A stretch of 64,000 bases of DNA from Mytilus californianus (GCF_021869535.1 NW_026262667.1:6820001-6884000), one strand, 5' to 3'; positions 3,204 to 63,532 are shown, counted from the stretch's first letter. The notes: generated by a model not told the origin, from the sequence alone. Program-made: numbers and translations.

Positions 3204-3488
3204 AGAAAAATTGGTACCGTTAATTTTATTATTTTAACACGTAGTTTTCTTCATGTAATGAAAAGTTAAACAAATAAATTACATTCCTCTCTCAAAATTT
3301 GCATATTTTATTTAAGATCTAGACTGATTGTGTTCTGCTCTTTTATAATACAAGATGGCGAGATCACCGATCTACCTTAATCCAACCGATTGTGTGTCCT
3401 CAGTCTGTAATGTTTACTTTCCAGCATTTCTTCTGTCATCTTAATTTTCTTTTAATAGATACACTGCCCTTCGATACACTGTGTATGT

Positions 3489-3772
3489 AAAAGAGAGGCA
3501 AAGGATACCAAAGGGACATTTAAACTCATAAGTAGAAAATAAACTGACAACGCCATGGCTAAAAAAGAAAAAGACAAACAAACAACAGCACATAAAACAC
3601 AACATAAAAAAACAAATACTGAGCAACACGAACCCCACCAAAAACTAGGGGTGATCTCAGGTGCTCCGGAAGGGTAAGCAGATCCTGCTGCACATGTGGC
3701 ACCCGTCGTGTTGCTCATGCTAGTTCAAACCAGGTAATAAGTCTAATTCGGTAGGTCACATTCAGGGAAAAG
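3489..3772 (-). repeat. Family A 3'-end/pLTR copy
   Basis: Near-identical to the 3' ends at 23950 and 31741; lies about 170 bp downstream of the HtrL-like stop. Confidence 0.9.
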
Positions 3773-3945: not shown

Positions 3946-4853
3946 TTAAGCGATACATGTGTCTACACTGTCATTTAATTTTATAAACCTCTGACAGAGT
4001 TTACCAAGAAAAAACCATCGATCGTTTCTTCCTTTTTTCAAACTCATTGGGTTAAAAAAAGTTTGAATTGGTATCCTAGGATGAAAGGATAGTTTTAATG
4101 AATACAATATATACAACACTTGCTGATCAGAGTTCATTAGATTCATTTCAAGCAAGCGTTCAACGGCAGACTTATAATCCTCAATGAACAACATAAGATT
4201 GTCCGGTCTTCCAATGAAAAAACCGCAAGCTATATATAATCTACTTGTATATATAATTTCTGTCAGATTGAGCTGATGTTTGAAAAAATCTACTTGCGAA
4301 AATAAAATATGATCATCTCTAATATCCTTAGGAGTTTCCATTTTAAAACAACCGGGTTCTTTCTTTCTAAAATAGCCTATATCGATCCATGCAATATATT
4401 TCGTCCTAAATAACTTTTCTTTTATTACTTGTTCCATTAATTCATACTTAGCATGCATTGCAGATGAATAAGCAGGCACACCTACATTTGGATAATATTT
4501 CGGATACCCCGGTTGGTTATAAATCTCTTCGATTCTTGCTTTTAATTGAAAAGCCCAAAGACTTGTTTGATTCACTATAAATACCTTAGTCATATGTTTT
4601 GGAAAATGTGCACGATATAATTCAAATTGCACCGATAAATCAATTACGTCCGTATAAAGGATGACACAATTGTTCACAGACCGAAAATTTTTCATCCAAG
4701 TATAATATCTGCTTGGTGAATATATAAGATGTGGACCTTTTTTGAACGATCCGATGTTGAAATAAGCTGTTATTAATGTCAATTCGCCTTCCTTTTCATG
4801 ATCATTGATATTTCCACGACCCATAACCTTTACTGACAAATAATTCTGGAAAT
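3946..4853 (-). CDS. HtrL/YibB-like protein (putative glycosyltransferase), main coding exon
   Basis: Long open frame. Motifs LTLITAYFNIG, VILYTD, AYSSAMHAKYEL, YIAWIDIGY, GFFIG and DQQVL resemble the HtrL_YibB family as recalled. Acceptor tacatttttttcAG at 4855-4854, and the frame stays open from there to the ORF-track start. Confidence 0.75.
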
Positions 4854-11049: not shown

Positions 11050-11333
11050 CTTTTCACGAATGTGACATACCGAATTAGACTATTTACCGGATTTGTAATA
11101 ACATAAGCAACACGACGGGTGCCACATGTGGAGCAGGATCTGCTTACCCTTCCGGACCACCTGAGATCACCCCCAGTTTTTGGTGGGGTTCGTGTTGCTT
11201 TGTCTTTAGTTTTCTATGTTGTATCATCTGTACTATTATTTGTCTGTTTGTGTTTTTATTTTTGGCCATGGCGTTGTCAGTTTGTTTTCGATCTATGAGT
11301 TTGACTGTCCCTCTGGTATCTTTCGTCCCTCTT
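11050..11333 (+). repeat. Family A 3'-end/pLTR copy
   Basis: cttttcacgaatgtgac...gggtgccacatgtggagcagg...ggtatctttcgtccctctt. Confidence 0.9.
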
Positions 11334-23811: not shown

Positions 23812-23949
23812 CACAGGTTTAAGATGTATAATCCTCCCAGGTTAAGAACACATACACTGATTGTGAAAATAATGAAAACAAACTATATAAATTGATGAAC
23901 GAGGTTCCCGAATAGTTGTCTAGGTAACAAATATACAGTAGGGACCTTT

Positions 23950-24851
23950 AAAAGAGGGACGAAAGATACCAGAGGGACATTCAAACTCATAGATCGAAAA
24001 CAAACTGACAACGCCATGGCCAAAAACCAAAAAACAAACAAACAATAGTACAGATGACACAACATAGAAAACTAAAGTCTAAGCACCACGAACCCCACAA
24101 AAAACTGGGGGTGATCTCAGGTGCTCCGGAAGGGTAAGCAGATCCTGCTCCACATGTGGCACCCGTCGTGTTGCTTATGTTATTACAAATCCGGTAAATA
24201 GTCTAATTCGGTAGGTCACATTCGTGAAAAGGGAAGGGTATTGTAGTTACGACATAAGGAACATATCCGATATCATCTGTGAAACGGTTATTCCATAACG
24301 GTCAACCAACTCGTGATGGCGTCCGTAAAATTTACGAAGGGATGATTTCAACTTCACCATTTGGAACTCTTGGTTTAATAGCTTCCCTGTGTGTAGCAAT
24401 CCTCTATCAAGGAAATCATGATAGGAAATACAAGCCCGGGAATATCGTATCAATTGGGAGATATATACTCCGTATGCAGGCGCTGCTGGAATGTTGCTAC
24501 ATAGAAATGGAAAGTTCACAATTGGGACGCTGAAATCATCTCTTTTGTCGTAAAGTTTTGTTTTCAACCGACCCTCATTGTCAATTTCTAGATGTAAGTC
24601 AAGATATGAGGCAGACTTAACTGTATCTGTAGTATCCTTATCTCTAGTTCGATGGGATAGATTCGTTCAACATAGTCACCAAATTTTGTATTATTTAGTG
24701 AGAGAACATCATCTATATAGCGGAACGTAAAGTTAAAGGATATTGCTAACTTATTATCTTTCTTCCTAAGAAGTTCCTGTATGAAGTCAGCCTCATAATA
24801 ATTAAGAAACAAGTCGGCAAGAAGAGGGGCACAGTTGGTTCACATTGGAAT
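23950..24851 (-). mobile_element. Penelope-like element family A, 5'-truncated RT C-terminus plus 3' end
   Basis: ORFs 24588-24812 (FRYIDDVLSLNN) and 24247-24567 (KLYDKRDDF...AYGVYISQLIRYSRAC); same 3' end as 31741. Confidence 0.88.
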
Positions 24852-31740: not shown

Positions 31741-32951
31741 AAAAGAGGGACGAAAGATACAAGAGGGACAGTCAAACTCATAGATCGAAAAATAAACTGA
31801 CAACGCCATGGCCAAAAATAAAAAGACAAACAGACAAATAAAGTACAGATGACACAACATAGAAATCTAAAGACTAAGCAACACGAACCCCACAAAAAAC
31901 TGGGGGTGATCTCAGGTGCTCCAGAAGGGTAAGCAGATCCTGTGGCACCCGTCGTGTTGCTTATGTTATTACAAATCCGGTAAATAGTCTAATTCGGTAG
32001 GTCACATTCGTGAAAAGGGAAGGGTATTGTAGTTACGACATAAGGACATCATCTGTGAAACGGTTATTTCATAACAGTCAACCAACTCGTGATGGCGTCC
32101 GTAAAATTTACGAAGGGATGATTTCAACCTAACCATTTGGAACTCTTGGTTTAATAGCTTCCTTGTGAGCAGCAATCCTCTATCAAGGAAATCATGATAG
32201 GAAATACAAGCCCGGGAATATCGTATCAATTGGGAATATATACTCCGTATGCAGGCGCTGCTGGAATGTTGCTACATAGAAATGGAAAGTTCACAATTGG
32301 GAAGCTGTAATCATCTCTTTTGTCGTAAAGGTTTGTTTTCAACCGACCATCATTGTCAATTTCTAGATGTAAGTCAAGATATGAGGCAGACTTAACTGTA
32401 TCTGTAATATCCTTTATCTCTAGTTCGATGGGATAGATTCGTTCAACATAGTCACCAAATTTTGTATTATTTAGTGAGAGAACATCATCTATATAGCGGA
32501 ACGTAAAGTTAAAGGATATTGCTAACTTCTTATCTTTCCTCCTAAGAAGTTCCTGTGTGAAGTCAGCCTCATAATAATAAAGAAGCAAGTCGGCAAGAAG
32601 AGGGGCACAATTGGTTCCCATTGGAATTCCGACAGTCTGTTGAAAAACACGTCCTCCAAACGTAACAAATATGTTGTCAATCAAGAAATCAAGCATCTTG
32701 ATAATGTCAGTTTCAGAGAATTTTTTGTTTGAATCAAAGTGATTCTTTACAAAGTAGGATTTATCCCTCCCCAAGACAAGATACTTGTATCTACGTTCGC
32801 CATTCTTATTAATAAAACAAAGTAATACCAACTCTTTCAATTTGTCTTTTAGTTTGGAATGGGGAATACTTGTGTAAAGTGTAGAAAAGTCAAATGTTTT
32901 AATACTATTGCAAGATGAGAGAGTCTTAGATTGTATGTACTCTAAAAGATC
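31741..32951 (-). mobile_element. Penelope-like element (Naiad-type, family A), 5'-truncated: RT domain plus 3' end/pLTR, with frameshift
   Basis: ORF 32226-32975 contains IKTFDFSTLYTSIPH, VGIPMGTNCAPLLADL, FRYIDDVLSLN and YLDL. Thumb region continues in ORF 32002-32229. No C-terminal GIY-YIG, consistent with N-terminal-EN PLEs. Ends in ...ctttcgtccctctttt. Confidence 0.88.
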
Positions 32952-33344
32952 ATAAGAGATAAGTATGTAATACAAAAGTATTTAAATGTTTGAACAATGT
33001 CTTACATATTTGCATTTGGGGCTTCAAACGTCTTGTAATAGGTACAACCTTCTGAAATAGCTTCATTTTGAGATATGGTTATTAATATTGAGAAAAATCC
33101 AAGGCTTTACCCCAAAATATGTATTTTGCAAATATCGTCATGTAGTTACAAATCCTTTGGTTTAAGATTTTGCTCATTGTAGCGCTGATCGGAATTGTAA
33201 TATACTTTTGCTAAAACTACCTGAATGCAACAATCAAATGCTTCTTAACTTTACGAATCAACGTTTCAAACTAACAGTCGTACTCTTGTTAGCTAGTAGA
33301 TAGACAAAGATAACTACACGATTACAAAGTCCCTGTTACAAATC

Positions 33345-33800
33345 AAAGAGAGGCGAAAGATACCAACGGGACATTCTAACTCATAAGTCGAAAATAAACT
33401 GACAACGCAATGGATAAAAAAGAAAACGACAAATAGACACAAAACACAACATAAAAAACCAAAGACTGAGCAACACGAATCCCAACGAAAACTGTGGGTG
33501 ATTTCGGTTGCACCTCATGTGGCACCCGTCGTGTTGCTTATAAAAGTACAAACCCGGTGATAAGTCTTATTCGATAGGCCACATTCGGGGAAAAGGGGAC
33601 GGGATTGTAGTTACGACAATTGGAACATATCCGTCGTCGTCTGTGAAACAGATATTCCATAACGGTTGACCAACTCGTGATGGCGTCTGTAAAATTTACA
33701 AAGGAATGATTTCAACTTCATCCCTCGGAAATCTAGGTTTAATAGCTTCCTCGTGAGTAGTAACCCTCTATCAAGGAAATCATGATAGTAAACGCAAGCT
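33345..33800 (-). mobile_element. Family A RT C-terminal remnant plus 3' end
   Basis: ccaactcgtgatggcgtc...caaggaaatcatgata matches 32080-32200. Confidence 0.8.
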
Positions 33801-38778: not shown

Positions 38779-39752
38779 GTGGCCTGATACTATTTTTAGT
38801 TTGCTGTATACTCAGTCTGACTGATATCATTTCGCCAGTGTCAATAAAAAGAAAATCGACAGCTGAAACAATTTCACAGGTGCCTTTATACATAGAATCA
38901 ACAGTCACAAAACATTATTACAGTTTGATCGAAAACAGGAAGGGTTCAATATGTCCTATCTTGCAAGGTGGACTCGGAAATAGATTGTTTCAATTTTCTA
39001 CTGCGTTTGCTGCTGCAAGGGCTAAGAATATGAATCTTATCATACCGTCTGATACTGAAATCAGCATGGTTTTTGAAATTAATGAGACCTTCAATGAAGC
39101 AAGACAATTGTGTAAGGGGTTTCGTAAGATTTTAGATAAAGCATCTCCAACTTTCCATAAAAACTTGATGAACTTTAGCTCACATGATAATATTCAACTT
39201 GGATATGGGCTTCAGTCGTGGAAATATTTTCATATGTATGATAAACAGCTAAAGAAGCAATTAACATTTAGAAAGCATATACAACATGAAGCAAAACAGA
39301 CAATCGATAAAATACTGCAACGACGTAACATAACGTCACGCAAGAGTGTTAATTTGGTTGGTGTTCATATAAGGAGAGGCGATAAGGTTGGTAATGATGA
39401 TGGGTTTAACATCGCAACACCAGAGTATTTAAGTAGATCTGTTAACTATTACACTAAAAAATATGAAGCTGTTTTATTTCTAGTTATATCAGATGGAATG
39501 TCATGGTCTAAAAAAAATATGCCTTCTCATGTTCCAGTAGAATATATATCATTAGGTAAAAGAGAACTTGATATGGCAACTGCAGTTGCCTGTGACCACA
39601 CAATTATGACAATAGGAACGTTTGGCTGGTGGATCGGCTTCTTAACTGGTGGAGAAGTGGTATTCGTGAAGGATTCTGCAGCAAAGGGTTCACGATTTGA
39701 AAGGATACTAAATTTTGAAGATCATTACTATCCTCACTGGGTAGGACTTTAG
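38779..39752 (+). CDS. Galactoside alpha-1,2-fucosyltransferase (GT11, FUT1/FUT2/Sec1-like), main coding exon
   Basis: GT11 motifs QGGLGNRLFQF, VGVHIRRGD and DMATAVACDHTIMTIGTFGWW. The frame extends upstream of the ORF-track start through a TM segment GLILFLVCCILSL to acceptor cattttAG at 38777-38778 (phase 1). Confidence 0.93.
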
Positions 39753-49047: not shown

Positions 49048-49145
49048 TAGTACATTCCGATTGTTCAAGCCCCTGATTCTACCCAAGGATCTTGATTGTG
49101 TTCGTGAACTGCTCTTTAGTTTTCTTTCTAGTGTTTTGTGGCAAT

Positions 49146-49950
49146 TTTGTTTGTTCTTGTGACAATATTTTTTGTTCGTGTGACAATGTTGTTTGTTCTT
49201 GCGCCAATGTTGTTTGTTCTTTTGTGTTGTTTGTTCTTGTGACAATATTGTTTGTTCTTGTGACAATATTGTTTTTTCTTGCGACAAAGTTGTTTGTTCT
49301 TGTGACAATATTGTTTGTTCTTGTGACAATGTGGTTTGTTCTTGTGGTAATGTTGTTTGTTCTTGTGGTAATGGTGTTTGTTCTTGTGACAATATTGTTT
49401 GTTCTTGTGGTAATGTTGTTTGTTCTTGTGGTAATGTTGTTTGTTCTTGTGATAATGATGTTTGTTCTTGTGGTAATGTTGTTTTTTTGACAATGTTGTT
49501 TGTTCTTGTGGCCGGTTGTTTGTTGTTGTGGCCGGGTGTGTGTTGTTGTGGTCGGTTGTTTGTTCTTGTGACTGGTTGTTTGTTGTTGAGGCCGAGTGTG
49601 TGTTGTTGTGGCCGGTTGTTTGTTGTTTTGGCCGGTTGTTTGTTGTTATGACTGGTTGTTTGTTGTTGTGGCTGATTGTTTGTTATTGTGGCTGGTTGTT
49701 TGTTCTTGTGACTAGTTGTTTGTTCATAGGGCTGGTTGTTTGTTCTTGTGGCTGGTTGTTTGTTGTTTTGGCCGGTTGTTTGTTGTTGTGACTGGTTGTT
49801 TGTTATTGTGGCTGGTTGTTTGTTCTTGTGACTAGTTGTTTGTTCATAGGGCTGGTTGTTTGTTCTTGTGGCTGGTTGTTTGTGCTTGTGGCTGGTTATT
49901 TATTCTTATGGCTGGTTTTTTGTTCTTGTGGCTGGTTGTTTGTTCCTGTG
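49146..49950. repeat. Minisatellite: about 16 x 21-bp units, then about 23 x 20-bp units
   Basis: ttgtttgttcttgtgacaata (21 bp) up to about 49490; gctggttgtttgttcttgtg (20 bp) after. Confidence 0.92.
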
Positions 49951-55963: not shown

Positions 55964-56104
55964 TCAACAAGCAAGTTTCCAGTTTTTCATTCCAACTTTG
56001 ATTAAAGTATTCATGTCCTGAGGTCGGTTTGACGATGAGCATATCTCTTCTTGCTTCTGGTGACCTTCTGTGATAGAGCTCACGTATTGGATGTGGAACA
56101 CCGG
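55964..56104 (-). CDS. GH114 gene exon 5 (terminal; frame not shown in ORF track)
   Basis: Acceptor tcaattttAG|CCG; PVFHIQYVSSITEGHQKQEEICSSSNRPQDMNTLIKVGMKNWKLAC*; joins as RK-PVFHIQY, matching the family KPVFxxEY motif; phase 0. Confidence 0.88.
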   Translation of the reverse strand, partial: PVFHIQYVSSITEGHQKQEEICSSSNRPQDMNTLIKVGMKNWKLAC

Positions 56105-59100
56105 CTAAAATTGAATAAATCAAATGTATGAAAGACTAACGGTGCCTACCAAGATGACAAAATAATAAATGATACAAAAATTCCTGATCCGGAAAAAAAT
56201 TCAGTACTTGTTTCTGGTTTATTATGTTATTAAATTATTGTCTTACTAACTTCAACTCAACTTCTTCTTATATTCATACTTCCTAAAACAAACTTGCGAT
56301 GACAGCCTTCTTTGATATTGGGTCAAGTTCGTCTACTTTTACCGAAGTAAAATTATAGCATATGAAGTCCCAAATCAAGATCTGTTTGTTTTTTCTTCTA
56401 AATATTAGTCGAGTGTCAGTCTTAGTTCTTGAACACATTCTGCGTGGATGTGAAAGAAACATTATAACGCACTTCATTTAGACATCCATACTGCATCATG
56501 TGGTAAGTAAACTAAACTTAACTTTATCCCGTCATATTTTTCCGAATGTGACCTACCGAATTAAAGTTATCACCGGCTTGGTACTTACATGAGCAACACG
56601 ACGGGTGCCACATGTGGAGCAGAATTTGATGACTCTTCCAAATCACATGAGATCACCCGTTTTTTTTTGTGGGCTTATGTTTTGTATACTATTGTTTGTC
56701 TCTTGGTTTTTTTTTTCGTGTTTTTTTCCATGACGTTGTCAATTTATTTTTCGACTTATGAGTTTGAATGTCCCTTTGATATCTTTCGCCTCTCTTTTAT
56801 AGTTTAATGTTTACAATTTTTATCATTGTTTTAATTGAATTTTAATCAACTTCGATTCAACCTCAAATTGGGATTGAAAGTGATTCCAATGGATAACTGT
56901 CGATAGACACCAACTCATGGTTCTGATGTAAATAAAAGAGAAAGAAAAAACTACTTCTGTCAGATGAAGATGTTGATTAATTGAGTATGAGAATCAGAAA
57001 CTGGTTAGCTTTTTTTTCAAGGAAAAGTGAAATCACCAGTTGAGTTTAAATAGAGATTTACAATTCTTACTGAATCAAAATCCGCATTATATACAGGTCG
57101 GTTATAAAATAAACTGTTATATCATATTGTGTAGTTTTCATTATATTTTTGATTTGAGTTTAACAAGGAAAATGTAATATATTTTCAGTATACCTTTCTA
57201 GCATCAAAAAAAGGTTTGTACAGGTCACATTCGTGATACTCCATACAGGATTCGTTTATGGCGAAGTCAAAGTCGCCTACCAGGTCACTAATTTGGCTTA
57301 CATCGTTCTTCAGTCCTATAGCTAAACCATTTTCATGTGCCACTGCAAATTTATTTTCGAAAGTAAAATATAGTGCATAACTCAAGAAAATCTTCTTCTT
57401 GGACAGAGATCTTTAATTCGTATTCTGTTGAAAGATAATGATATCTTGTTTTATCAAATGGGACTTTCAAAGTAAACCAGTAGAAACAGGCAAAAGATTC
57501 GTAACTCGTTTGAAAAAAAATGATGTCGATCCCAAAGTATTTCATTTTCTATGAAAATGTAAATGTATATCAATTTCCGTATAAAAAATTAAAATGTAAT
57601 TATCATCTATATACACATTTAAAAAACGAAACTTTGTATAAAAAATATGTTCAAAAAACAACAAATAGCTATGTGTCGTTGCATTGGCTGTTATTTTAAT
57701 GAAATATAACACACATTTCATTTTAATCACAAAACCTTAAAAGCAACGAGGGGAATTAAAATTATGGAGATTGTTTATGATTTGAATGTGATCTTTCCTG
57801 TCCTAAACCTTTGAAAGAGCGATCATTATAATTAAAACACACATTTCATAAAATGAGCCAATAGAATACACCTATATGACTACTGTTGAAACACTATACA
57901 AATCTCGGCCTAAAATTGGACCCACTGACATTATTTGAAATTAAAAAAGTAACTGCACAAGTTTAAGAAAAACTGACAACGCCTTGACAAAATACGAAGA
58001 CTACAAAAAGACAATCAAGTCCACTAAACACTACATAAAAATCGTATAGACTGAGCAAAACGAACCCCATCAAAAACGGCTGGTGGTCGCAAGTGTTGTG
58101 GAAGGGTTGGCAGATCCTGTTTTTCTAGTGGCACCTGTCTGTTTCTCATTATAAGTCTATGTGTAGTGACAAGTCTCATTCAATGGTGTCTCAATCAATC
58201 ATAAGTACGGTAATGCGGCCATTTTAATTGGAACACGCCCGCGGCCGTTCGTGACACAGAAAATTCAACAATCGTCAACCAAACTCAAAACTCCCGAAAG
58301 GATAACCATTACTCCCACAACCCGAATCCGCCGGCCCAACGGCACTCCAGCAAGAAGCATTCCTCCACCACGGAAACGAAAGCTCTAGAATGTTTTATTT
58401 GGGAGACACACACTTCGCATGCAGGCGTCGCCCGTATGTCATTTAAGACTTGAAATCACTATTTATCACAGAAAAAGCTGCATTGTTGATGTTTTACACC
58501 ATTAAGTCTTCAACTAATATTTGAAGTTTGACTTGGTGTATCACAAAAAAGTGCTAGCAAATAATCCCTTATTCGACAAACTGTCATAATCATCGGTAAG
58601 AGAATCTAATATATATTGGTGGTTTCGATTCTGATTAAGATTATAATGTCATAAGGAAAACAAATATAAATAAATTCACTTTAATTATTTACAATGATTA
58701 GTTTTACAGCGCAATACAATTCGTCAACACGTATTTTATCCGTTATCACGAATTACAAAAAATGTGATCACGAATTTAATCGGTTATTGCGAATTACAAA
58801 AAAAAACTTTAACTTATTCCGTAAATTCGTGATAACCAATTTTTGGAGTGTTTCACCTAGTTTTTAGCATGTCACAATTCCCCACAATATACCTATTTTC
58901 CACCTCTAAGTTTTTGAGTGCGCCGGTCTGCTCTTGTCACGAGAACTTTCAATATATAAACATTGTCTTTTCGTGAATATAACGACTTAAAAGATGTGTC
59001 TGTGCAGATTTAAACATTAAAGACAAAAAACGATTTTTGTACATGTATTTGCGGTCTTCACGATGTATTCGCATTCAATGTGTACATCGGGATAAGGTCC

Positions 59101-62100
59101 AAGTAAGTTAATTTGAAAAGAGTTAATATTTGCTGCATTCGATTATTTTGGTATTTTGATTTCTGCACATCTCTGATCTCCATATGCAAACATAAACAGA
59201 TAATTGGCATGTTCCAGAGAGGTAAACAACTAGCAGAAAAATAAATTGAAGTGGATACTAAGGGAATTTATGCTCATAGCAACATTTTAAACCAATTTCA
59301 AATAAAGCTTCTATAGCCTGCTGTACTCGTCGTTTTCTTTTTTAGGGGGGATTGAATATATGGATATTTTGATTTTATTTCAATTTGTTTTTATTTTCAC
59401 TACTTACCAGAACGTTTTCTTGTTTATAAGAAATAAAGTCCTTGAAAAGATCAAGTTTCAGTTTTTGCTGGAGATGTAATATGTAAACACTTAATTTCAC
59501 AGTGTCCGGTTTTAATGTTTCATATTGCAATGCTTTCGGAACTTTTTGTCTCTATCGTAGTGTACTTTATGAAGATTAATCCAGAAACACGTGTCTCGCC
59601 CACAAAAATCGGTATCATACGTTGTGTGCACGTGATATGCAATAGTTGGACGTTGAAATAAACATTGCCCAATCGAAAAACCGTCGTTCAGATGAAATTG
59701 GATTTCCTTGATATCCACCTCTAAATTTTGATATCTAAAGTTCGTTTATATCTTTTAAAAGTCAACGTGGAATTAAAAATTCTGTGAGGAAATTCTAATG
59801 TGTAACATATGTATAGTTCACTAGTATCATTATTACAAAGTTTGACAAGGACGAAGAAAGGATGTCAAAGTATAAACATGTATTACCTGTCGCTAAATAT
59901 CTGTTATAGTCTAATTGATCATCTTGTGTTAAATGGAGTCCTGCTTGATTCTGTGACCATCCATTTACATTATCCGGATCTACACCATCACAATGTCGGG
60001 AATTTGCATATTCAATCCGATCTCTCATTATACGTCTAACTCTGCAAACATGATAATATTATGAAATATTGTATTGATTTAATGATTTCGATTGATTGAT
60101 GGCAAATTAACTTTCGGCGCTAAGTATTATGTTACATAATAGAAAAACAAAGGATATGGAGTATCAATCCATGACATAAAACAAATACATGCACAGCAAA
60201 GCAAAGCAAAGCAAAAAGCACACAAACCAAAGGAACAGCGCATTTGTTGCTATTCTTTATCTCAATGACGGCCCCTAGCACTGGTTTGAGTGGTATTCTT
60301 TGCAAAATAAATCGGTTAGACTTTGTAAGATGTACCACCACCAAATGCATATTCAGGAAAATGACATGTTAATGGGACATAAATATATCATGCTATGAAC
60401 CAGACTGACACATTTTAATGGGCTGGCCCTCAAGTCAATAGTCGGAGAAGATACATCTCCAGAACCGATCAGCCTCCCACTGAGAAGCAGCAAATAATAA
60501 TAAAGTCTTTGTTTTGACCCACTCGAACACGCTGATGACATGTCTCGCCTGCTTTACTGACCATGATTGACTTTAAGTTGAAAGATAAAGATTTTACTAC
60601 GTGTATCACATAAACTTGATAAAGGTTTTACTACATGTATCACATACAGTAATACCAATGATCCAGATGAACCAAGCTAGAAGGACATGTTCGCCTTGCA
60701 ATCTTTCCATACACCAAATATAGCTGACTTTTTCAGTTTCAAAGGAACAGACTTTACAAAGAAACTTAACATTGCCCAATTACCTGGACATTGAGGTCAG
60801 ATCAGATGAACACTGAGAGGTATACATGTACACCTCACAATCATTTCACACACCAAACATAGTTGACCTATTGCTTATAGTACCAAACTAAGGAAACTTA
60901 ACTTACGAATAAACCACGAAATGAGGCCAAGGTCAGAAGAAAGATGCCAAACTGATATCTACACCTTACAATTATTCCATACATTACATTTAGTTGTCCT
61001 ATTACGCATAATGAGTGAAAAACTCCCATGACGATAAAACTATTATTTTTTTAACTTGTCGCTTAAAATGAGTTCGAGGACAATGGACATATGACAGACA
61101 GAACATTTGTTACATATTAAAGGCATCTGTATAAAAGGTATGAAACATACATGTTTTTTACCACCGGAAGTATAAAGCTTTATACAAATATTTTACATCG
61201 CCAATAGCGCCGCCGGATTATATCCTTATGTCTCGCATTCTGTGGCATTCGTCGTAGGCGTTGCAAAAATGATATATACACACTGACTATTTCTGATGTC
61301 CACCCATGTCTCGCCTGGCCAGTCCTTATTAGGAACTCCAAGTCCATTAGATGGAAACTCGCCGGCATCGTTTCGCCAATTTTCTTTCGTTCCAGCCGAA
61401 AAGTAACATATCACCTTCTTCCCATTCCTGATTTTTGAAAACAAAATATTACATGGAAAGAATTAGTACAAATATGACGTACGGTTTTAATATAGTAGCA
61501 ACAACAGTTTATTACAAATTGTCAGAGGTAGTGGGGTCATTATTATTCATAACGACACAATTCATAAGTTACATATGAGGATGTATGTTTGCAACACATA
61601 ATTGGAATGCTACTGAAGCCAGAAGATTAATAGCTCACCAGTAATATAATCGACTCAGTATTACTAAATAAAAAAAAAGAAAATAAGCAGTAAAATTTAC
61701 TAATAAAGTTCGGTACCAAATACATAATAAATGGAAATTACATAAGTGTTTAGTATATGTTTTACGGCAGAAAAGAAATGCGCTTTCGGAAAATAATTGG
61801 ATGCCATTATTTTGCAGTGTCGTCCTTTTAATTTCTATGTTTCCCATTTTTTTAAGCAGATCCCCCGAAAGGCATTTTTCAGCAAGAATAGATATTTTGT
61901 AATCAACAATATGACATACCTGTGGAGATTATCAATAATGCTTTTAGGTACATCAAACAAATCGACGACAAACATGGTACCATGGATTTCAGTGTTGATG
62001 TGAGATTCACCTATCACATCGTTCCAGGCCATGTGCGGATGTAGGTGCCACCACGATGCATGTTCAAATGAAAAACACATTATGAAAATTACCAAAATAA

Positions 62101-62122
62101 GTGATATGTTCAAGCCAAGCAT
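55964..62122 (-). CDS. Secreted GH114 family endo-alpha-1,4-polygalactosaminidase-like protein, 263 aa; join complement(61920..62122, 61284..61427, 59887..60041, 57194..57342, 55964..56104)
   Basis: Five exons of 203+144+155+149+141 = 792 nt give 263 aa plus TGA. All introns are GT..AG with matching phases (2,2,1,0). Motifs in family order: signal peptide, WWHLHP, VVDLFDVP, GKKVICYFSAGTKENWRNDAGEFP, WPGETWVDIR, CDGVDPDNVNGW, DQLDYNRYLA, AHENGLAIGLKND, FDFAINESC, KPVFHIQY. These are recalled hallmarks of Glyco_hydro_114. Confidence 0.92.
56538..56798 (+). repeat. Family A 3'-end copy in GH114 intron 4
   Basis: gaatgtgacctaccg...gagcaacacgacgggtgccacatgtggagcag...atctttcgcctctctttt. Confidence 0.82.
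57194..57342 (-). CDS. GH114 gene exon 4 (contains INESC motif, putative catalytic Glu198)
   Basis: Acceptor aatttgcAG|TG; AHENGLAIGLKNDVSQISDLVGDFDFAINESCMEYHECDLYKPFFDARK; donor AAG|GTATAC. Confidence 0.92.
57968..58180 (-). repeat. Degenerate family A copy in GH114 intron 3
   Basis: aaactgacaacgcc...gactgagcaaaacgaacccc...ggaagggttggcagatcctg. Confidence 0.7.
59887..60041 (-). CDS. GH114 gene exon 3 (contains DPDNV motif, putative catalytic Asp139)
   Basis: Acceptor tgtttgcAG|A; VRRIMRDRIEYANSRHCDGVDPDNVNGWSQNQAGLHLTQDDQLDYNRYLAT; donor G|GTAATA. Confidence 0.92.
60387..60530 (-). mobile_element. Degenerate SINE with Meta-domain-like core, in GH114 intron 2
   Basis: Minus strand gttcgagtgggtcaaaacaaagact...tatttgctgcttctc resembles bivalve core SINEs as recalled. 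Confidence 0.45.
60536..61268 (+). mobile_element. Helentron-associated non-autonomous element (HINE/DINE-like) in GH114 intron 2
   Basis: Subterminal atgtctcgcct near the 5' end and tatgtctcgc...gtaggcg..aaaaa at the 3' end; degenerate internal core repeats (gaggtcag/gaggccaaggtcag, caccaaa..tagttgac, cacct.acaat). Confidence 0.5.
61284..61427 (-). CDS. GH114 gene exon 2
   Basis: Acceptor ttttcaaaaatcAG|G; NGKKVICYFSAGTKENWRNDAGEFPSNGLGVPNKDWPGETWVDIRNS; donor CA|GTGTGT. Confidence 0.92.
61920..62122 (-). CDS. GH114 gene exon 1 (ATG, signal peptide, N-terminal strand)
   Basis: ATG at 62122; MLGLNISLILVIFIMCFSFEHASWWHLHP...VVDLFDVPKSIIDNLH; donor AG|GTATGT after 61920. Confidence 0.9.
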
Positions 62123-63532
62123 TGATCTATTCTATGTTTAGTATCTTTGTTCAATGTTTAGTTTTCTAATCAGTCGTGACCTCTCGTTATTTATATATAT
62201 AGAGATTTTAGAACAAAGGTTTCGTTATGTGAGTTAACATATTGTATGAAAGTCTAAGTTGGCGGTTTAAATTATATGTGTGCAGTACAGGCATTGCTAA
62301 ACCAAGCTACTGAAATAACTTTGTGCATTAGTGTAACAATATGTTACTTCTCTTCGTTTTACACAGGAATCACTCTTTCCAAACTGAAAGACAGATTGAA
62401 AGAATGAGCCAAACATCTCTTTCAGTTGATGCGATATCTCAGGGCTTATGTTTCCAATAGATCATTATTAACTTGATAAAGGGTCGCTACTTACAGGAAA
62501 ATCTTTCCAATATAATCCCGATAACTAGAAGTTCTCCAAAATTTTTATGGACCTAGTTATAGACTAGATGTGTCGGAACGATCGAATGGACCCGCTCGCG
62601 CAAAAAAGCTCTGTGGAAATCTAAGAATGAAAGTCCGTATAACTGTTATTTTCACAAAATTGTCAAAATCTACAGTCCGTAATTTCAGCAAACATCAGCG
62701 GAGCGGAACAACTCATTATTGTAGACTCACATACTAAAAATCAGCTCAATATGTGAAGGCGTTTAGAAAAAAGTCCTTAGTGTCTAGTCCACAGAGATGT
62801 ATGAGATAGCCGAAGTCAACGAGGCAGAAATGTTAGTAAGGGACATGATAAGAAAATAAAATATTAGTTTAGAAACAAAATCCAATCAAAGACAGAATAT
62901 ATAAGTTCAAGGATACGAATCAAGATATTCGTTCCTTGCCAAAAAAAGGAAAAAACACAAAAAAAGCATAAAAACAAAACAAAAACAAAAACCAAAAAAC
63001 AAATACAGAAAACGGATATTTTGGCAAAAGCATATGAACAATTTAAGGAAATAAAAGTATCTGGAAGTTGTTTTGCTTGCTGTACTTTAAACTAAGATGA
63101 TTTGCCTGTGACATTTACTACATAAAAAATAGATGAACTAATACCAACTTATATAACTTTAAAGCTTGCTGTTCGATGTGAGCCAAGGCTCCGTGTTGAA
63201 GGCCGTACTTTGACCTATAATTGTTTACTTTTTACACGTTGTGACTTGGATGGATAGTTGTCTCATTGGCACTCATACCACATCTTCTTATTTATATTTA
63301 GTACATTATGGCTAAACCATGATTCAGAGGTGTTTTAGAACAGAAAATAAAACGATCTTAGTACAGATGTCGATGCAAATTTTTTATTAGTTTACGGTGT
63401 ATCAGATATTGTGTATTTCCTTAAAACCCTTAACAAATGTCCATTTCTTTGTATATGAAGTGAACATATCAGGAATTACATGCTGTAGGAAGCTATGCCA
63501 TGAACATGTATTTTCTATCGAAATCCTACGGG

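What the first reader, a model, noticed from the sequence alone, without database searches (positions are those of the whole stretch)
55964..62122. Intact, intron-containing, secreted GH114 polygalactosaminidase-like gene in an animal genome
Seen: five exons splice with GT-AG borders and matching phases into a 263-aa ORF with no stops or frameshifts. It has a signal peptide, and exon 5 is invisible in the ORF track. The DPDNV (Asp139) and INESC (Glu198) motifs are present, 59 residues apart. Established: GH114 enzymes such as Aspergillus Ega3 use an Asp/Glu pair in these motifs to cleave alpha-1,4-galactosamine polymers (fungal galactosaminogalactan, bacterial Pel-type biofilm polysaccharide), and the family is known mainly from bacteria and fungi. 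The introns carry host SINE, PLE and Helentron-like insertions, so this is a resident gene rather than contamination. Inference: an old horizontal acquisition domesticated by a filter feeder as a secreted anti-biofilm, antifungal or digestive enzyme.
Basis: partly seen in the sequence, partly recalled or inferred. Interest (0 to 1): 0.87.

Follow-up and report, generated by a model that had tools for sequence, protein, structure and literature searches.

The report
Bacterial-type biofilm-sugar enzyme gene in mussel
This California mussel gene is real and intact, and it encodes a secreted enzyme of a family (GH114) otherwise known from bacteria and fungi, where it cuts a sugar polymer of microbial biofilms; molluscs as a whole seem to have picked it up long ago, most likely from bacteria.

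Summary
On the minus strand, five GT-AG exons (62122-61920, 61427-61284, 60041-59887, 57342-57194, 56104-55964) splice into a 263-aa ORF. It is 100% identical to RefSeq XP_052090580.1, "uncharacterized protein LOC127727172" of Mytilus californianus. The window is JAKFGE010000019.1:6,820,001-6,884,000.

The protein is a GH114 in the strict sense:
- Pfam PF03537, E 5e-75.
- AlphaFold model pLDDT 93; best PDB match Ega3, TM 0.83-0.86.
- D139, E198 and W104 align with Ega3 Asp189, Glu247 and Trp154.
- Six conserved cysteines.

An intronless 914-nt contig from a related mussel aligns to exactly these five exons. dN/dS is 0.25-0.48.

The family is not specific to filter feeders. A conserved "B-type" occurs in chitons, gastropods and bivalves. 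It forms one clade (99/99) among Myxococcota-dominated bacterial sequences, with 55-60% identity. The window gene belongs to a fast-evolving, multi-copy "A-type" seen only in mussels and oysters. Several A-type copies have lost catalytic residues; this one has not.

A- and B-type bivalve genes share all four intron positions and phases, which argues for one ancient origin. A fungal sister group is disfavoured but not rejected (AU p 0.18). Substrate and biological role are untested. I found no paper on molluscan GH114.

The parts
61920..62122 (-). Exon 1. ATG at 62122. Encodes the hydrophobic N-terminal segment (residues 6-19) and the start of the barrel, and ends at the first two bases of codon 68.
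   Evidence: GT donor; the related-mussel transcript L002 aligns to 62172-61915, including about 50 nt of 5' UTR contiguous with the exon.
61284..61427 (-). Exon 2. Carries the ICYFSAG motif and Trp104, which corresponds to the lid-loop Trp154 of Ega3.
   Evidence: AG/GT borders. Pfam PF03537 E 5e-16, profile positions 38-82; block 61430-61284. W104 conserved.
59887..60041 (-). Exon 3. Carries CDGVDPDNV with Asp139, the predicted nucleophile.
   Evidence: E 4e-15, profile 91-140; alignment to Ega3 6oj1/6ojb. Ega3 Asp189 is the nucleophile.
57194..57342 (-). Exon 4. Carries AINESC with Glu198, the predicted acid/base, and Cys200 and Cys206.
   Evidence: E 4.4e-16, profile 143-191; alignment to Ega3, where E223 of chain 6ojb is Glu247.
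55964..56104 (-). Exon 5. Encodes the last barrel strands, Cys239, the C-terminal Cys263 and the TGA stop.
   Evidence: weak Pfam hit, profile 192-223; block 56106-55898, including about 66 nt of 3' UTR.
62190..62201 (-). TATA-like box (TATATATAAATA) about 70-80 nt upstream of the ATG. Candidate core promoter.
   Evidence: The related-mussel transcript reaches 62172, which fits a start site just downstream. This is inference only.
56526..56812 (.). Copy of a dispersed host repeat (Naiad-type Penelope-like element tail) inside intron 4.
   Evidence: 70-84% identical to at least 12 other places in the window, including 11051-11333, which holds the element noted earlier at 11104-11200.
57950..58149 (.). 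Second copy of the same dispersed repeat family, inside intron 3.

Best explanation
The locus is LOC127727172 of Mytilus californianus, an intact five-exon nuclear gene. It encodes a 263-aa protein with an N-terminal secretion signal and a single GH114 (beta/alpha)8-barrel domain.

Proposed mechanism, by homology with Aspergillus Ega3: a retaining endo-alpha-1,4-galactosaminidase. Asp139 acts as nucleophile and Glu198 as acid/base. A mobile loop tipped by Trp104 closes over an acidic cleft that binds cationic, de-N-acetylated galactosamine polymers such as bacterial Pel and fungal galactosaminogalactan.

Proposed history:
- A GH114 gene, most likely from a Myxococcota-like bacterium, entered the molluscan stem lineage.
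- In bivalves it carries four introns at fixed positions. The time of their gain is unknown, because no gastropod or chiton gene structure could be read.
- It persists as a conserved 'B-type' gene in chitons, gastropods and bivalves.
- In the ancestor of mussels and oysters a duplicate diverged quickly into the 'A-type'. This expanded into several paralogues, at least four of them on this scaffold.
- The window gene is an A-type copy that keeps the full catalytic set.

The likely role is extracellular breakdown of microbial matrix polysaccharide at mucosal or gut surfaces, for defence, anti-fouling or feeding. Shown here: gene structure, family membership, fold, residue conservation, purifying selection, distribution and intron conservation. 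Inferred: secretion, substrate, biological role, donor.

Confidence by part: gene model and GH114 membership about 0.97; ancient non-animal origin about 0.85; bacterial rather than fungal donor about 0.7; galactosaminidase activity of this copy about 0.55.
For: Gene and identity:
- Gene model, and exact identity to XP_052090580.1.
- The window equals the M. californianus scaffold.

Family and fold:
- Pfam PF03537, E 5e-75.
- AlphaFold2 pLDDT 93, pTM 0.88.
- Foldseek PDB ranking: Ega3 6oj1_A (E 5e-28, TM 0.83/0.86, 37% identity), then F. solani GH114 9ep6, then GH191 and PelA with 12-15% identity.
- Asp139 and Glu198 align with Ega3 Asp189 and Glu247. These are the experimentally verified nucleophile and acid/base (PMC12054363).
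- Trp104 corresponds to the lid Trp154, by numbering offset from Asp189.
- D139 and E198 are at least 90% conserved, and six Cys are invariant or at least 90% conserved, in 60 homologues.
- Predicted pI of residues 23-263 (taken as the mature protein) is 5.5.

Expression and selection:
- The intronless contig L002 from a related mussel matches the five exons.
- dN/dS is 0.25 against paralogue LOC127727175 and 0.48 against L002.

Resident in the host genome:
- The scaffold is 12.5 Mb.
- Host repeats lie in the introns.
- Paralogues lie at 6.38, 6.40 and 6.91 Mb on the same scaffold.
- The oyster, unionid and clam homologues lie on chromosome-scale records next to animal genes.

Distribution:
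- Five Mytilus species and four oyster species.
- Sinanodonta and Mactra.
- Pinctada, two chiton genes and five gastropods.

Single old origin:
- Intron positions and phases (2, 2, 1, 0) fall at identical alignment columns in mussel A-type, oyster A-type and Mactra B-type genes.
- In Sinanodonta the last two introns fall at the same columns and phases, and an exon-2-like piece lies unannotated in the long intron.
- The B-type clade has 99/99 support, with chitons branching first.
- A tree holding A and B together is as good as the free tree (AU p 0.57 and 0.44).

Bacterial affinity:
- The B-type clade sits among Myxococcota-dominated sequences.
- The chiton protein is 55-60% identical to these bacterial proteins.
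- B-type proteins share Glu137 with the two Myxococcota-type proteins in the alignment, whereas the one fungal protein has Asp.
- The one fungal gene examined has no introns.
Against: - No RNA-seq or protein evidence for this exact gene in M. californianus was available. The transcript evidence comes from a 74.5%-identical relative, whose Asp139 is replaced by Glu.
- No signal-peptide predictor was run. Ega3 itself is membrane-bound, so a signal anchor is not excluded.
- The A-type clade has a very long stem (about 1.2 changes per site). It is placed unstably, away from the B-type, in every free tree.
- Holding molluscs and fungi together costs only 23.7 log-likelihood units (AU p 0.18). For the A-type alone it costs nothing (p 0.51).
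- The branches that link the B-type clade to Myxococcota have only moderate support (84-89).
- Intron positions could not be checked in any gastropod or chiton.
- My hit lists were cut at 120 rows, so other animal phyla with more distant copies could have been missed.
- Several A-type paralogues have lost catalytic residues. The subfamily may therefore be drifting away from hydrolysis.
- No molluscan or bacterial GH114 of this clade has been assayed. The authors of PMC12054363 could not produce bacterial GH114 enzymes in soluble form.
Confidence: 0.7

Rival explanations
1. Vertical descent. GH114 is an ancient eukaryotic (opisthokont) gene shared with fungi. Among animals it survives only in molluscs and was lost elsewhere.
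For: - AU tests do not reject a clade of molluscs plus fungi (p 0.18). For the A-type alone p is 0.51.
- The FastTree run put the A-type next to fungi and Plasmodiophora, with weak support of 73.
- GH114 also occurs in Plasmodiophora, Diplonema and a diatom.
Against: - The best trees place the short-branched B-type inside a bacterial clade, and the fungi are separated by a 99/96 or 95/97 split.
- The chiton protein is 55-60% identical to myxobacterial-type proteins. The window protein is about 43% identical to fungal ones.
- No non-molluscan animal appeared in three searches.
- This history would need losses in nearly every other animal lineage.
- The Diplonema domains sit with other bacterial groups, and Plasmodiophora is a very long branch. 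This suggests repeated transfers into eukaryotes.
Confidence: 0.08
2. Transfer between eukaryotes. The molluscan gene came from a fungus or another microbial eukaryote, not from a bacterium.
For: - The same non-rejecting AU tests apply.
- The best solved-structure match is fungal Ega3, at 37% identity.
- The A-type shares Asp137 (VDPDNV) with the fungal protein in the alignment.
Against: - PDB holds no bacterial GH114 structure (PMC12054363), so Ega3 ranking first says little about the donor.
- All B-type molluscan proteins but two (Pomacea and one Sinanodonta copy) carry Glu137, as do the two myxobacterial-type proteins in the alignment.
- The constrained tree is 23.7 log-likelihood units worse.
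- Identities to bacteria are higher.
Confidence: 0.1
3. Two acquisitions. The mussel and oyster A-type, including the window gene, entered independently of the mollusc-wide B-type.
For: Free maximum-likelihood trees never join A and B. The A-type lands near Chloroflexota, Gammaproteobacteria or fungal groups.
Against: - All four intron positions and phases are identical between A-type (mussel, oyster) and B-type (Mactra) genes. In Sinanodonta the last two introns match as well.
- That match is very unlikely for independent intron gains.
- Trees with A and B held together are equal or better (lnL +2.9, p 0.57; lnL -3.7, p 0.44).
- The A-type placement has support of only 28-57, and its stem is about 1.2 changes per site. 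Both are typical of a long-branch artefact.
- The C. virginica A-type and B-type genes carry consecutive RefSeq gene numbers (LOC111134233 and LOC111134234), which hints at a tandem origin. I did not check their coordinates.
Confidence: 0.07
4. Changed or lost enzymatic function. The A-type proteins, possibly including this one, no longer cleave galactosamine polymers. They may act on another glycan or serve as sugar-binding (lectin-like) recognition proteins.
For: - The A-type stem evolved fast.
- dN/dS is moderately high, up to 0.48.
- The family has expanded in Mytilus.
- Several copies carry catalytic substitutions: LOC127727174 and M. coruscus P0005 (D139T, E198V, W104S), M. gigas (D139G), M. 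trossulus LOC134706562 (D139N, E198D), and the M. galloprovincialis nearest relative of this gene (D139E).
Against: - The window copy keeps D139, E198, W104, D134, N140, N197 and all six Cys.
- Its model superposes on Ega3 with TM 0.83-0.86.
- dN/dS is below 0.5, so the protein is under purifying selection.
Confidence: 0.2
5. Contamination or assembly artefact. The gene is microbial DNA mis-assembled into the mussel genome.
For: None beyond the bacterial and fungal affinity of the family.
Against: - The gene has four spliceosomal GT-AG introns that carry host repeats.
- It lies in a 12.5-Mb scaffold.
- Homologues exist in five Mytilus assemblies and in oysters on chromosome-scale records beside animal genes.
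- CDS GC is 41% and GC3 is 40%, against 34% for the window.
Confidence: 0.01

Closest known systems
Ega3 of Aspergillus fumigatus (CAZy GH114; PDB 6oj1, 6ojb), an endo-alpha-1,4-galactosaminidase
   Same: - Same Pfam family.
- Best structural match: TM 0.83/0.86, 37% identity.
- The catalytic Asp and Glu and the lid Trp align.
- The six Cys that are conserved across the family are also present in the one fungal GH114 in my alignment, an Aspergillus undulatus protein.
   Different: - Ega3 is described as membrane-bound and is part of the fungus's own GAG biosynthesis cluster (PMC12054363). The mussel protein has a short hydrophobic N-terminus of signal-peptide type, and no galactosamine-polymer synthesis genes were identified in the window.
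- The mussel gene has four introns. The Aspergillus undulatus GH114 gene I examined has none.
- The mussel protein's activity is untested.
Bacterial GH114 'endo alpha-1,4 polygalactosaminidase' proteins of Myxococcota, Burkholderiales and Gammaproteobacteria
   Same: - They are the nearest sequence relatives outside molluscs: 44-55% identity to the window protein and 55-60% to the chiton B-type.
- They have the same length class, cysteines and catalytic motifs.
   Different: - They are prokaryotic and intronless.
- According to PMC12054363, bacterial GH114 enzymes could not be produced in soluble form, so their biochemistry is almost unknown.
CAZy GH191 (Thermotoga TM1410, PDB 2aam and 9eux; environmental enzyme, 9ep5) and GH166 (PelA hydrolase domain, 5tcb)
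   Same: They have the same modified (beta/alpha)8 barrel, an Asp/Glu pair in equivalent places, and galactosamine-polymer substrates. GH191 proteins also match Pfam PF03537.
   Different: - They share only 12-15% identity and have lower TM scores (0.66-0.71).
- Exon 3 finds Ega3 and FsGH114 by sequence but not the GH191 chains.
- The mussel protein is therefore GH114 in the strict sense, not GH191 or GH166.
Other carbohydrate-active enzymes in molluscs ascribed to horizontal transfer, such as GH45 cellulases and fungal-type GH13_1 alpha-amylases of bivalves (PMC13084967, PMC7003070; titles and abstracts seen)
   Same: The general pattern matches: a microbial-type glycoside hydrolase, patchy among animals, that has acquired introns and is kept as a secreted enzyme.
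   Different: The family and presumed substrate differ: cationic microbial exopolysaccharide rather than plant, algal or storage glucans. I found no paper that mentions GH114 in molluscs.

Membership tests
CAZy GH114 / Pfam PF03537 Glyco_hydro_114 | Significant match to the family profile over most of its length | tested here: met
   P0268 scores E 5e-75 and 252 bits (gathering score 27), residues 41-253 on profile positions 9-223 of 231. Exons 2-4 each pass the threshold on their own, in colinear order.
CAZy GH114 / Pfam PF03537 Glyco_hydro_114 | [quoted passage not shown] | tested here: met
   AlphaFold2 model with pLDDT 93 and pTM 0.88. Foldseek top hits are 6oj1_A (TM 0.83/0.86) and 9ep6_A (TM 0.80/0.73).
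CAZy GH114 / Pfam PF03537 Glyco_hydro_114 | Catalytic pair: Asp nucleophile in the DPDN motif and Glu acid/base in the NE.C motif (Ega3 Asp189 and Glu247) | tested here: met
   Asp139 and Glu198 align with the Ega3 residues. Both are at least 90% conserved in 60 homologues.
CAZy GH114 / Pfam PF03537 Glyco_hydro_114 | GH114 in the strict sense rather than the sister family GH191, which also matches PF03537 | tested here: met
   Identity is 37% to Ega3 and 27% to FsGH114, against 12-15% to GH191 structures. Sequence search with exon 3 finds only the GH114 chains.
CAZy GH114 / Pfam PF03537 Glyco_hydro_114 | Mobile lid loop with a Trp at its tip (Ega3 Trp154) in the beta3 insertion | tested here: met
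   Trp104 is at the matching position by numbering offset from the nucleophile. It is at least 90% conserved. Loop movement itself cannot be tested here.
CAZy GH114 / Pfam PF03537 Glyco_hydro_114 | Conserved cysteine (disulfide) pattern of the secreted enzymes | tested here: inconclusive
   Cys75, 133, 200, 206, 239 and 263 are invariant or at least 90% conserved in molluscs, bacteria and fungi. I did not examine which cysteines pair in the model.
CAZy GH114 / Pfam PF03537 Glyco_hydro_114 | Endo-alpha-1,4-galactosaminidase activity on de-N-acetylated GalN stretches, with a retaining mechanism | not testable with these tools
   This needs recombinant enzyme and GalN oligomers, GAG or Pel substrates.
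Horizontally acquired gene in an animal genome | Physically part of the host chromosome, not contamination | tested here: met
   Four GT-AG introns with host repeats, in a 12.5-Mb scaffold. The bivalve homologues from other orders lie on chromosome-scale records.
Horizontally acquired gene in an animal genome | Nests inside a non-animal clade in a phylogeny | tested here: inconclusive
   The B-type molluscan clade (99/99) sits among Myxococcota-dominated bacteria, but the connecting branches have support of 84-89 only. The A-type placement is unstable. A clade of molluscs plus fungi is not rejected (p 0.18). Every topology found has molluscs surrounded by microbes.
Horizontally acquired gene in an animal genome | Restricted, patchy distribution among animals | tested here: inconclusive
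   Only molluscs (Polyplacophora, Gastropoda, Bivalvia) appear among named animal hits in three searches. The lists are cut at 120 rows, and no animal-genome tblastn was possible.

The most novel reading that the evidence does not exclude
Molluscs carry the only GH114 family found in animals in these searches, acquired once from a Myxococcota-like bacterium before chitons and shelled molluscs split. In mussels and oysters a duplicate became a rapidly diversifying, multi-copy set of secreted proteins. Some members are active biofilm-matrix hydrolases, such as this gene. Others have lost their catalytic residues and may be sugar-binding proteins. On this reading a bacterial enzyme was turned into an innate-immunity or anti-fouling gene family that targets Pel- or GAG-type cationic exopolysaccharides.
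Probability: 0.3. Interest if true: 0.7.

Novelty: new member of a known kind. Interest (0 to 1): 0.5.

Why it matters
GH114 enzymes such as Ega3 are studied as agents that break up Pseudomonas Pel and Aspergillus GAG biofilms. An animal-encoded, secreted version would be a new kind of host factor acting on the microbial matrix.

It would also give a dated example of a bacterial gene fixed in a whole animal phylum, followed by lineage-specific expansion and partial loss of catalysis. The enzyme is small (about 28 kDa without the signal segment) and predicted with high confidence. The claim can be tested directly with recombinant protein.

The limits are these. The gene is already in RefSeq as an uncharacterised protein. 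Acquisition of microbial glycoside hydrolases by invertebrates is a known pattern. The biochemical role is still inferred.

Tried and rejected
- The joined protein could not be typed in as a query, so I began with single exons by reference. A 51-aa exon 3 query against the representative library led to full-length relatives. A cluster look-up then gave P0268, which is identical to my spliced product.
- Exact look-ups of the exon 3 read-through ORF and of the neighbouring GT11 ORF found nothing.
- The protein-atlas search with exon 3 only repeated the GH114 label.
- A FastTree run of 318 domains put the A-type beside fungi and Plasmodiophora with support 73. I do not rely on it. Careful IQ-TREE runs moved the A-type, and AU tests show its position is not resolved.
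- A careful search on 97 rows did not finish in time and was replaced by focused sets.
- In one search the Sinanodonta partial sequence grouped with the A-type (89/51). After the full B-type set was found, it belongs with Mactra in the B-type.
- The chiton locus was not on record. Intron positions outside bivalves therefore remain unknown.
- The Ega3 paper (Bamford et al. 2019) is not held. Ega3 facts are taken from PMC12054363.
- One literature search was wasted by a loose term setting.
- Contamination was considered and rejected.

Full report
**1. The observation**

On the minus strand I rebuilt the gene from the raw sequence. The exons are 62122-61920, 61427-61284, 60041-59887, 57342-57194 and 56104-55964. 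Every intron begins with GT and ends with AG. The exons start at codon offsets 0, 2, 2, 1 and 0, and they join into a 792-nt CDS of 263 codons with no internal stop. DPDNV begins at residue 137 and INESC at 196.

Only one copy lies in the window. Pfam GH114 (PF03537) hits exons 2, 3 and 4 independently, at E 5e-16, 4e-15 and 4e-16. The hits fall on consecutive parts of the profile, and exon 5 adds a weak continuation. That pattern is far beyond chance.

**2. Identity of the locus**

A spliced protein has no reference form, so I searched with exon 3 alone. I then searched with a full-length relative that this turned up, and looked up its cluster members. One member, P0268 = XP_052090580.1, is [quoted passage not shown]. 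It is identical to my spliced product at all 263 residues.

The gene lies on GCA_021869535.1 scaffold JAKFGE010000019.1, which is 12.5 Mb long. The window equals positions 6,820,001-6,884,000 of that record, base for base over the 18,037 bases compared.

Three paralogues lie on the same scaffold:
- LOC127726959 at 6.38 Mb.
- LOC127727175 at 6.40 Mb.
- LOC127727174 at 6.91-6.93 Mb.

**3. Is it a real, working gene?**

- *Host context.* Introns 3 and 4 each hold a copy of a roughly 280-bp dispersed repeat. It occurs at least 12 more times in the window. One of those copies spans the Penelope-like element tail noted earlier at 11104-11200.
- *Composition.* CDS GC is 41%, against 30-36% in the introns.
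- *Transcript evidence from a relative.* A 914-nt Logan contig (SRR26849181, locus L002) carries an uninterrupted ORF for a 261-aa protein that is 74.5% identical. This protein clusters with M. galloprovincialis LOC143063633, which is the window gene's nearest relative in the trees (100/98).
- *Junctions.* L002 aligns to the window in exactly five blocks. Their ends coincide with my splice junctions, and the blocks add about 50 nt of 5' UTR and 66 nt of 3' UTR. A contig that lacks all four introns must come from spliced RNA, so the exon structure is confirmed in a related mussel.
- *Promoter.* A TATA-like box sits at 62201-62190.
- *Selection.* dN/dS is 0.25 against LOC127727175 and 0.48 against L002. 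This indicates purifying selection, though not a tight one.
- *What is missing.* I have no transcript or protein data for this exact gene in M. californianus.

**4. What the protein is**

The whole protein matches PF03537 at E 5e-75, over residues 41-253. PF03537 now covers two CAZy families, GH114 and the new GH191 (PMC12054363), so I tested which one applies.

- Exon 3 finds Ega3 (6oj1 and 6ojb, E 4e-10) and the Fusarium solani GH114 (9ep6), but no GH191 chain.
- The AlphaFold2 model has pLDDT 93 and pTM 0.88.
- Its best PDB matches, in order, are:
  - Ega3: E 5e-28, TM 0.83/0.86, 37% identity.
  - FsGH114: 27% identity.
  - GH191 and PelA: 12-15% identity.

The protein is therefore GH114 in the strict sense.

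From the printed alignments, chain positions D165 and E223 of 6ojb correspond to Ega3 Asp189 and Glu247. PMC12054363 describes these as the experimentally verified nucleophile and acid/base. They align with Asp139 and Glu198 of the mussel protein. Trp104 matches the lid Trp154, by numbering offset from the nucleophile.

In a 60-sequence alignment, D139 and E198 are at least 90% conserved. Six cysteines (75, 133, 200, 206, 239, 263) are invariant or nearly so. Residues 23-263 have a predicted pI of 5.5, which fits an acidic cleft for a cationic polymer.

The N-terminus (residues 6-19) is hydrophobic, lies outside the domain and has low model confidence. That fits a signal peptide. No predictor was available, and Ega3 itself is described as membrane-bound, so a signal anchor is not excluded.

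**5.

The first full-length search found homologues in five Mytilus species and in the oysters Ostrea, Crassostrea, Magallana and Saccostrea. After those came bacterial proteins at 44-55% identity to the window protein. A partial hit proved to be from the freshwater mussel Sinanodonta.

Searching with that sequence, and then with a chiton sequence, revealed a second and more conserved group, which I call B-type. It occurs in:
- Bivalves: Mytilus edulis, Crassostrea virginica, Pinctada, Mactra, Sinanodonta.
- Chitons: two genes of Liolophura.
- Gastropods: Lottia, Patella, Gigantopelta, Littorina, Pomacea.

The window gene belongs to the other group, A-type, which I saw only in mussels and oysters. 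No non-molluscan animal appeared among the named hits. The lists are cut at 120 rows, so this is not proof of absence.

Outside animals the family occurs in many bacterial phyla, in fungi, and in Plasmodiophora, Diplonema and a diatom.

**6. Origin**

*Trees.* In the final careful tree (78 rows, LG+C20+F+G4), the B-type molluscan sequences form one clade with 99/99 support. Chitons branch first, as expected for vertical descent within Mollusca. The clade sits among Myxococcota-dominated bacterial sequences, but the connecting branches have support of only 84-89.

The chiton protein is 55-60% identical to these bacterial proteins. That is about as close as it is to other molluscs. Nearly all B-type proteins share Glu137 with the two Myxococcota-type proteins in the alignment, where the one fungal protein and most A-type proteins have Asp.

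The A-type clade (100/100) has a stem of about 1.2 changes per site. It lands in different, weakly supported places in each analysis.

*AU tests.*

| Rows held together | Log-likelihood vs free tree | p-AU |
|---|---|---|
| A-type + B-type, earlier set | 2.9 higher | 0.57 |
| A-type + B-type, final set | 3.7 lower | 0.44 |
| All molluscs + fungi | 23.7 lower | 0.18 |
| A-type (plus the Sinanodonta fragment) + fungi | 0.7 higher | 0.51 |

Sequence trees alone therefore cannot place the A-type, and they cannot exclude a fungal sister group.

*Gene structure.* Introns fall at the same alignment columns with the same phases (2, 2, 1, 0) in these genes:
- Two M. californianus A-type genes.
- The Ostrea edulis A-type gene.
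- The Mactra B-type gene.

In Sinanodonta the last two introns fall at the same columns and phases. An exon-2-like piece lies unannotated in the long intron.

Four shared positions across Pteriomorphia, Palaeoheterodonta and Heterodonta, and across A-type and B-type, argue for one ancestral intron-bearing gene. On that reading the A-type is a diverged duplicate. The one fungal gene I examined has no introns.

*Reading.* My best account is a single transfer from a bacterium into the molluscan stem, followed by duplication and rapid divergence in the mussel and oyster lineage. Vertical descent from an ancient eukaryotic gene, or a fungal donor, remain minority possibilities.

**7. Likely function**

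By homology the protein should be a retaining endo-alpha-1,4-galactosaminidase that acts on de-N-acetylated galactosamine stretches. Such stretches occur in fungal galactosaminogalactan and bacterial Pel (PMC12054363).

No genes for making such a polymer were identified in the window. A secreted animal copy would therefore most plausibly act on microbial matrix, for defence, for keeping surfaces clean, or for feeding. The B-type's presence in biofilm grazers (chitons, limpets, periwinkles) fits a feeding or surface role at least as well as filter feeding does.

Several A-type copies have lost key residues:
- LOC127727174 and a M. coruscus copy: D139T, E198V, W104S.
- M. gigas: D139G.
- M. trossulus LOC134706562: D139N, E198D.
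- M. galloprovincialis LOC143063633, the nearest relative of this gene: D139E.

Part of the subfamily may therefore have moved to binding rather than cutting. The window copy keeps every residue I checked. All of this section is inference, because no molluscan GH114 has been assayed.

**8. Novelty and verdict**

The gene is already in RefSeq as an uncharacterised protein, and UniProt labels relatives automatically as GH114 domain proteins. In the paper library I found nothing that links GH114 to molluscs or to any other animal.

It is a new member of a known kind: a GH114 enzyme, and one more microbial glycoside hydrolase taken up by an invertebrate lineage. The mollusc-wide spread, the conserved introns and the fast-evolving mussel and oyster subfamily add interest. 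Interest is moderate.

Noticed in passing
window 3946-4839 (-): A 297-aa single-exon ORF matches Pfam PF09612 HtrL_YibB ('bacterial protein of unknown function') at E 1.8e-9. It may be another bacterial-type gene in this mussel scaffold.
   Followed up: no
window 38838-39752 (+): A 304-aa single-exon ORF matches glycosyltransferase family 11 (alpha-1,2-fucosyltransferase type) at E 1e-38. An exact look-up of this ORF found nothing on record.
   Followed up: partly
window 49092-49651: A repetitive tract gives long pseudo-ORFs on both strands. The 48-50 kb bin has a strong strand bias: GC skew 0.26 and AT skew -0.44.
   Followed up: no
window 32226-32975 (-): A 249-aa ORF has a weak reverse-transcriptase match (PF00078, E 6e-6). 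It is probably a retroelement remnant.
   Followed up: no
window, about 14 places (e.g. 3488-3771, 11051-11333, 23946-24230, 33342-33605, 56526-56812, 57950-58149): A dispersed repeat of about 280 bp, 70-84% identical between copies. It includes the Penelope-like element tail noted earlier at 11104-11200.
   Followed up: partly
L004 (M. californianus LOC127727174, scaffold 6.907-6.927 Mb): This paralogue, about 25 kb from the window gene, has lost both catalytic residues and the lid Trp (D139T, E198V, W104S), yet keeps all six cysteines and an open frame. M. coruscus has the same variant (P0005). It may be a pseudoenzyme.
   Followed up: partly
L087:28195-28329 (Sinanodonta woodiana): The annotated model P0012 skips an exon-2-like piece that lies in its 25-kb intron. 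The piece is identical to part of the neighbouring paralogue's protein P0310. This looks like an annotation error or interleaved gene models.
   Followed up: partly
P0118 (record named Carpinus fangiana): This GH114 protein, filed under a tree species, sits inside the fungal clade (95/89 with a lichen fungus). It is probably fungal contamination of a plant assembly.
   Followed up: no
P0002 (Plasmodiophora brassicae), P0013 (Diplonema papillatum): These proteins carry five and three tandem GH114 domains respectively. Such multi-domain layouts were not seen in molluscs.
   Followed up: no
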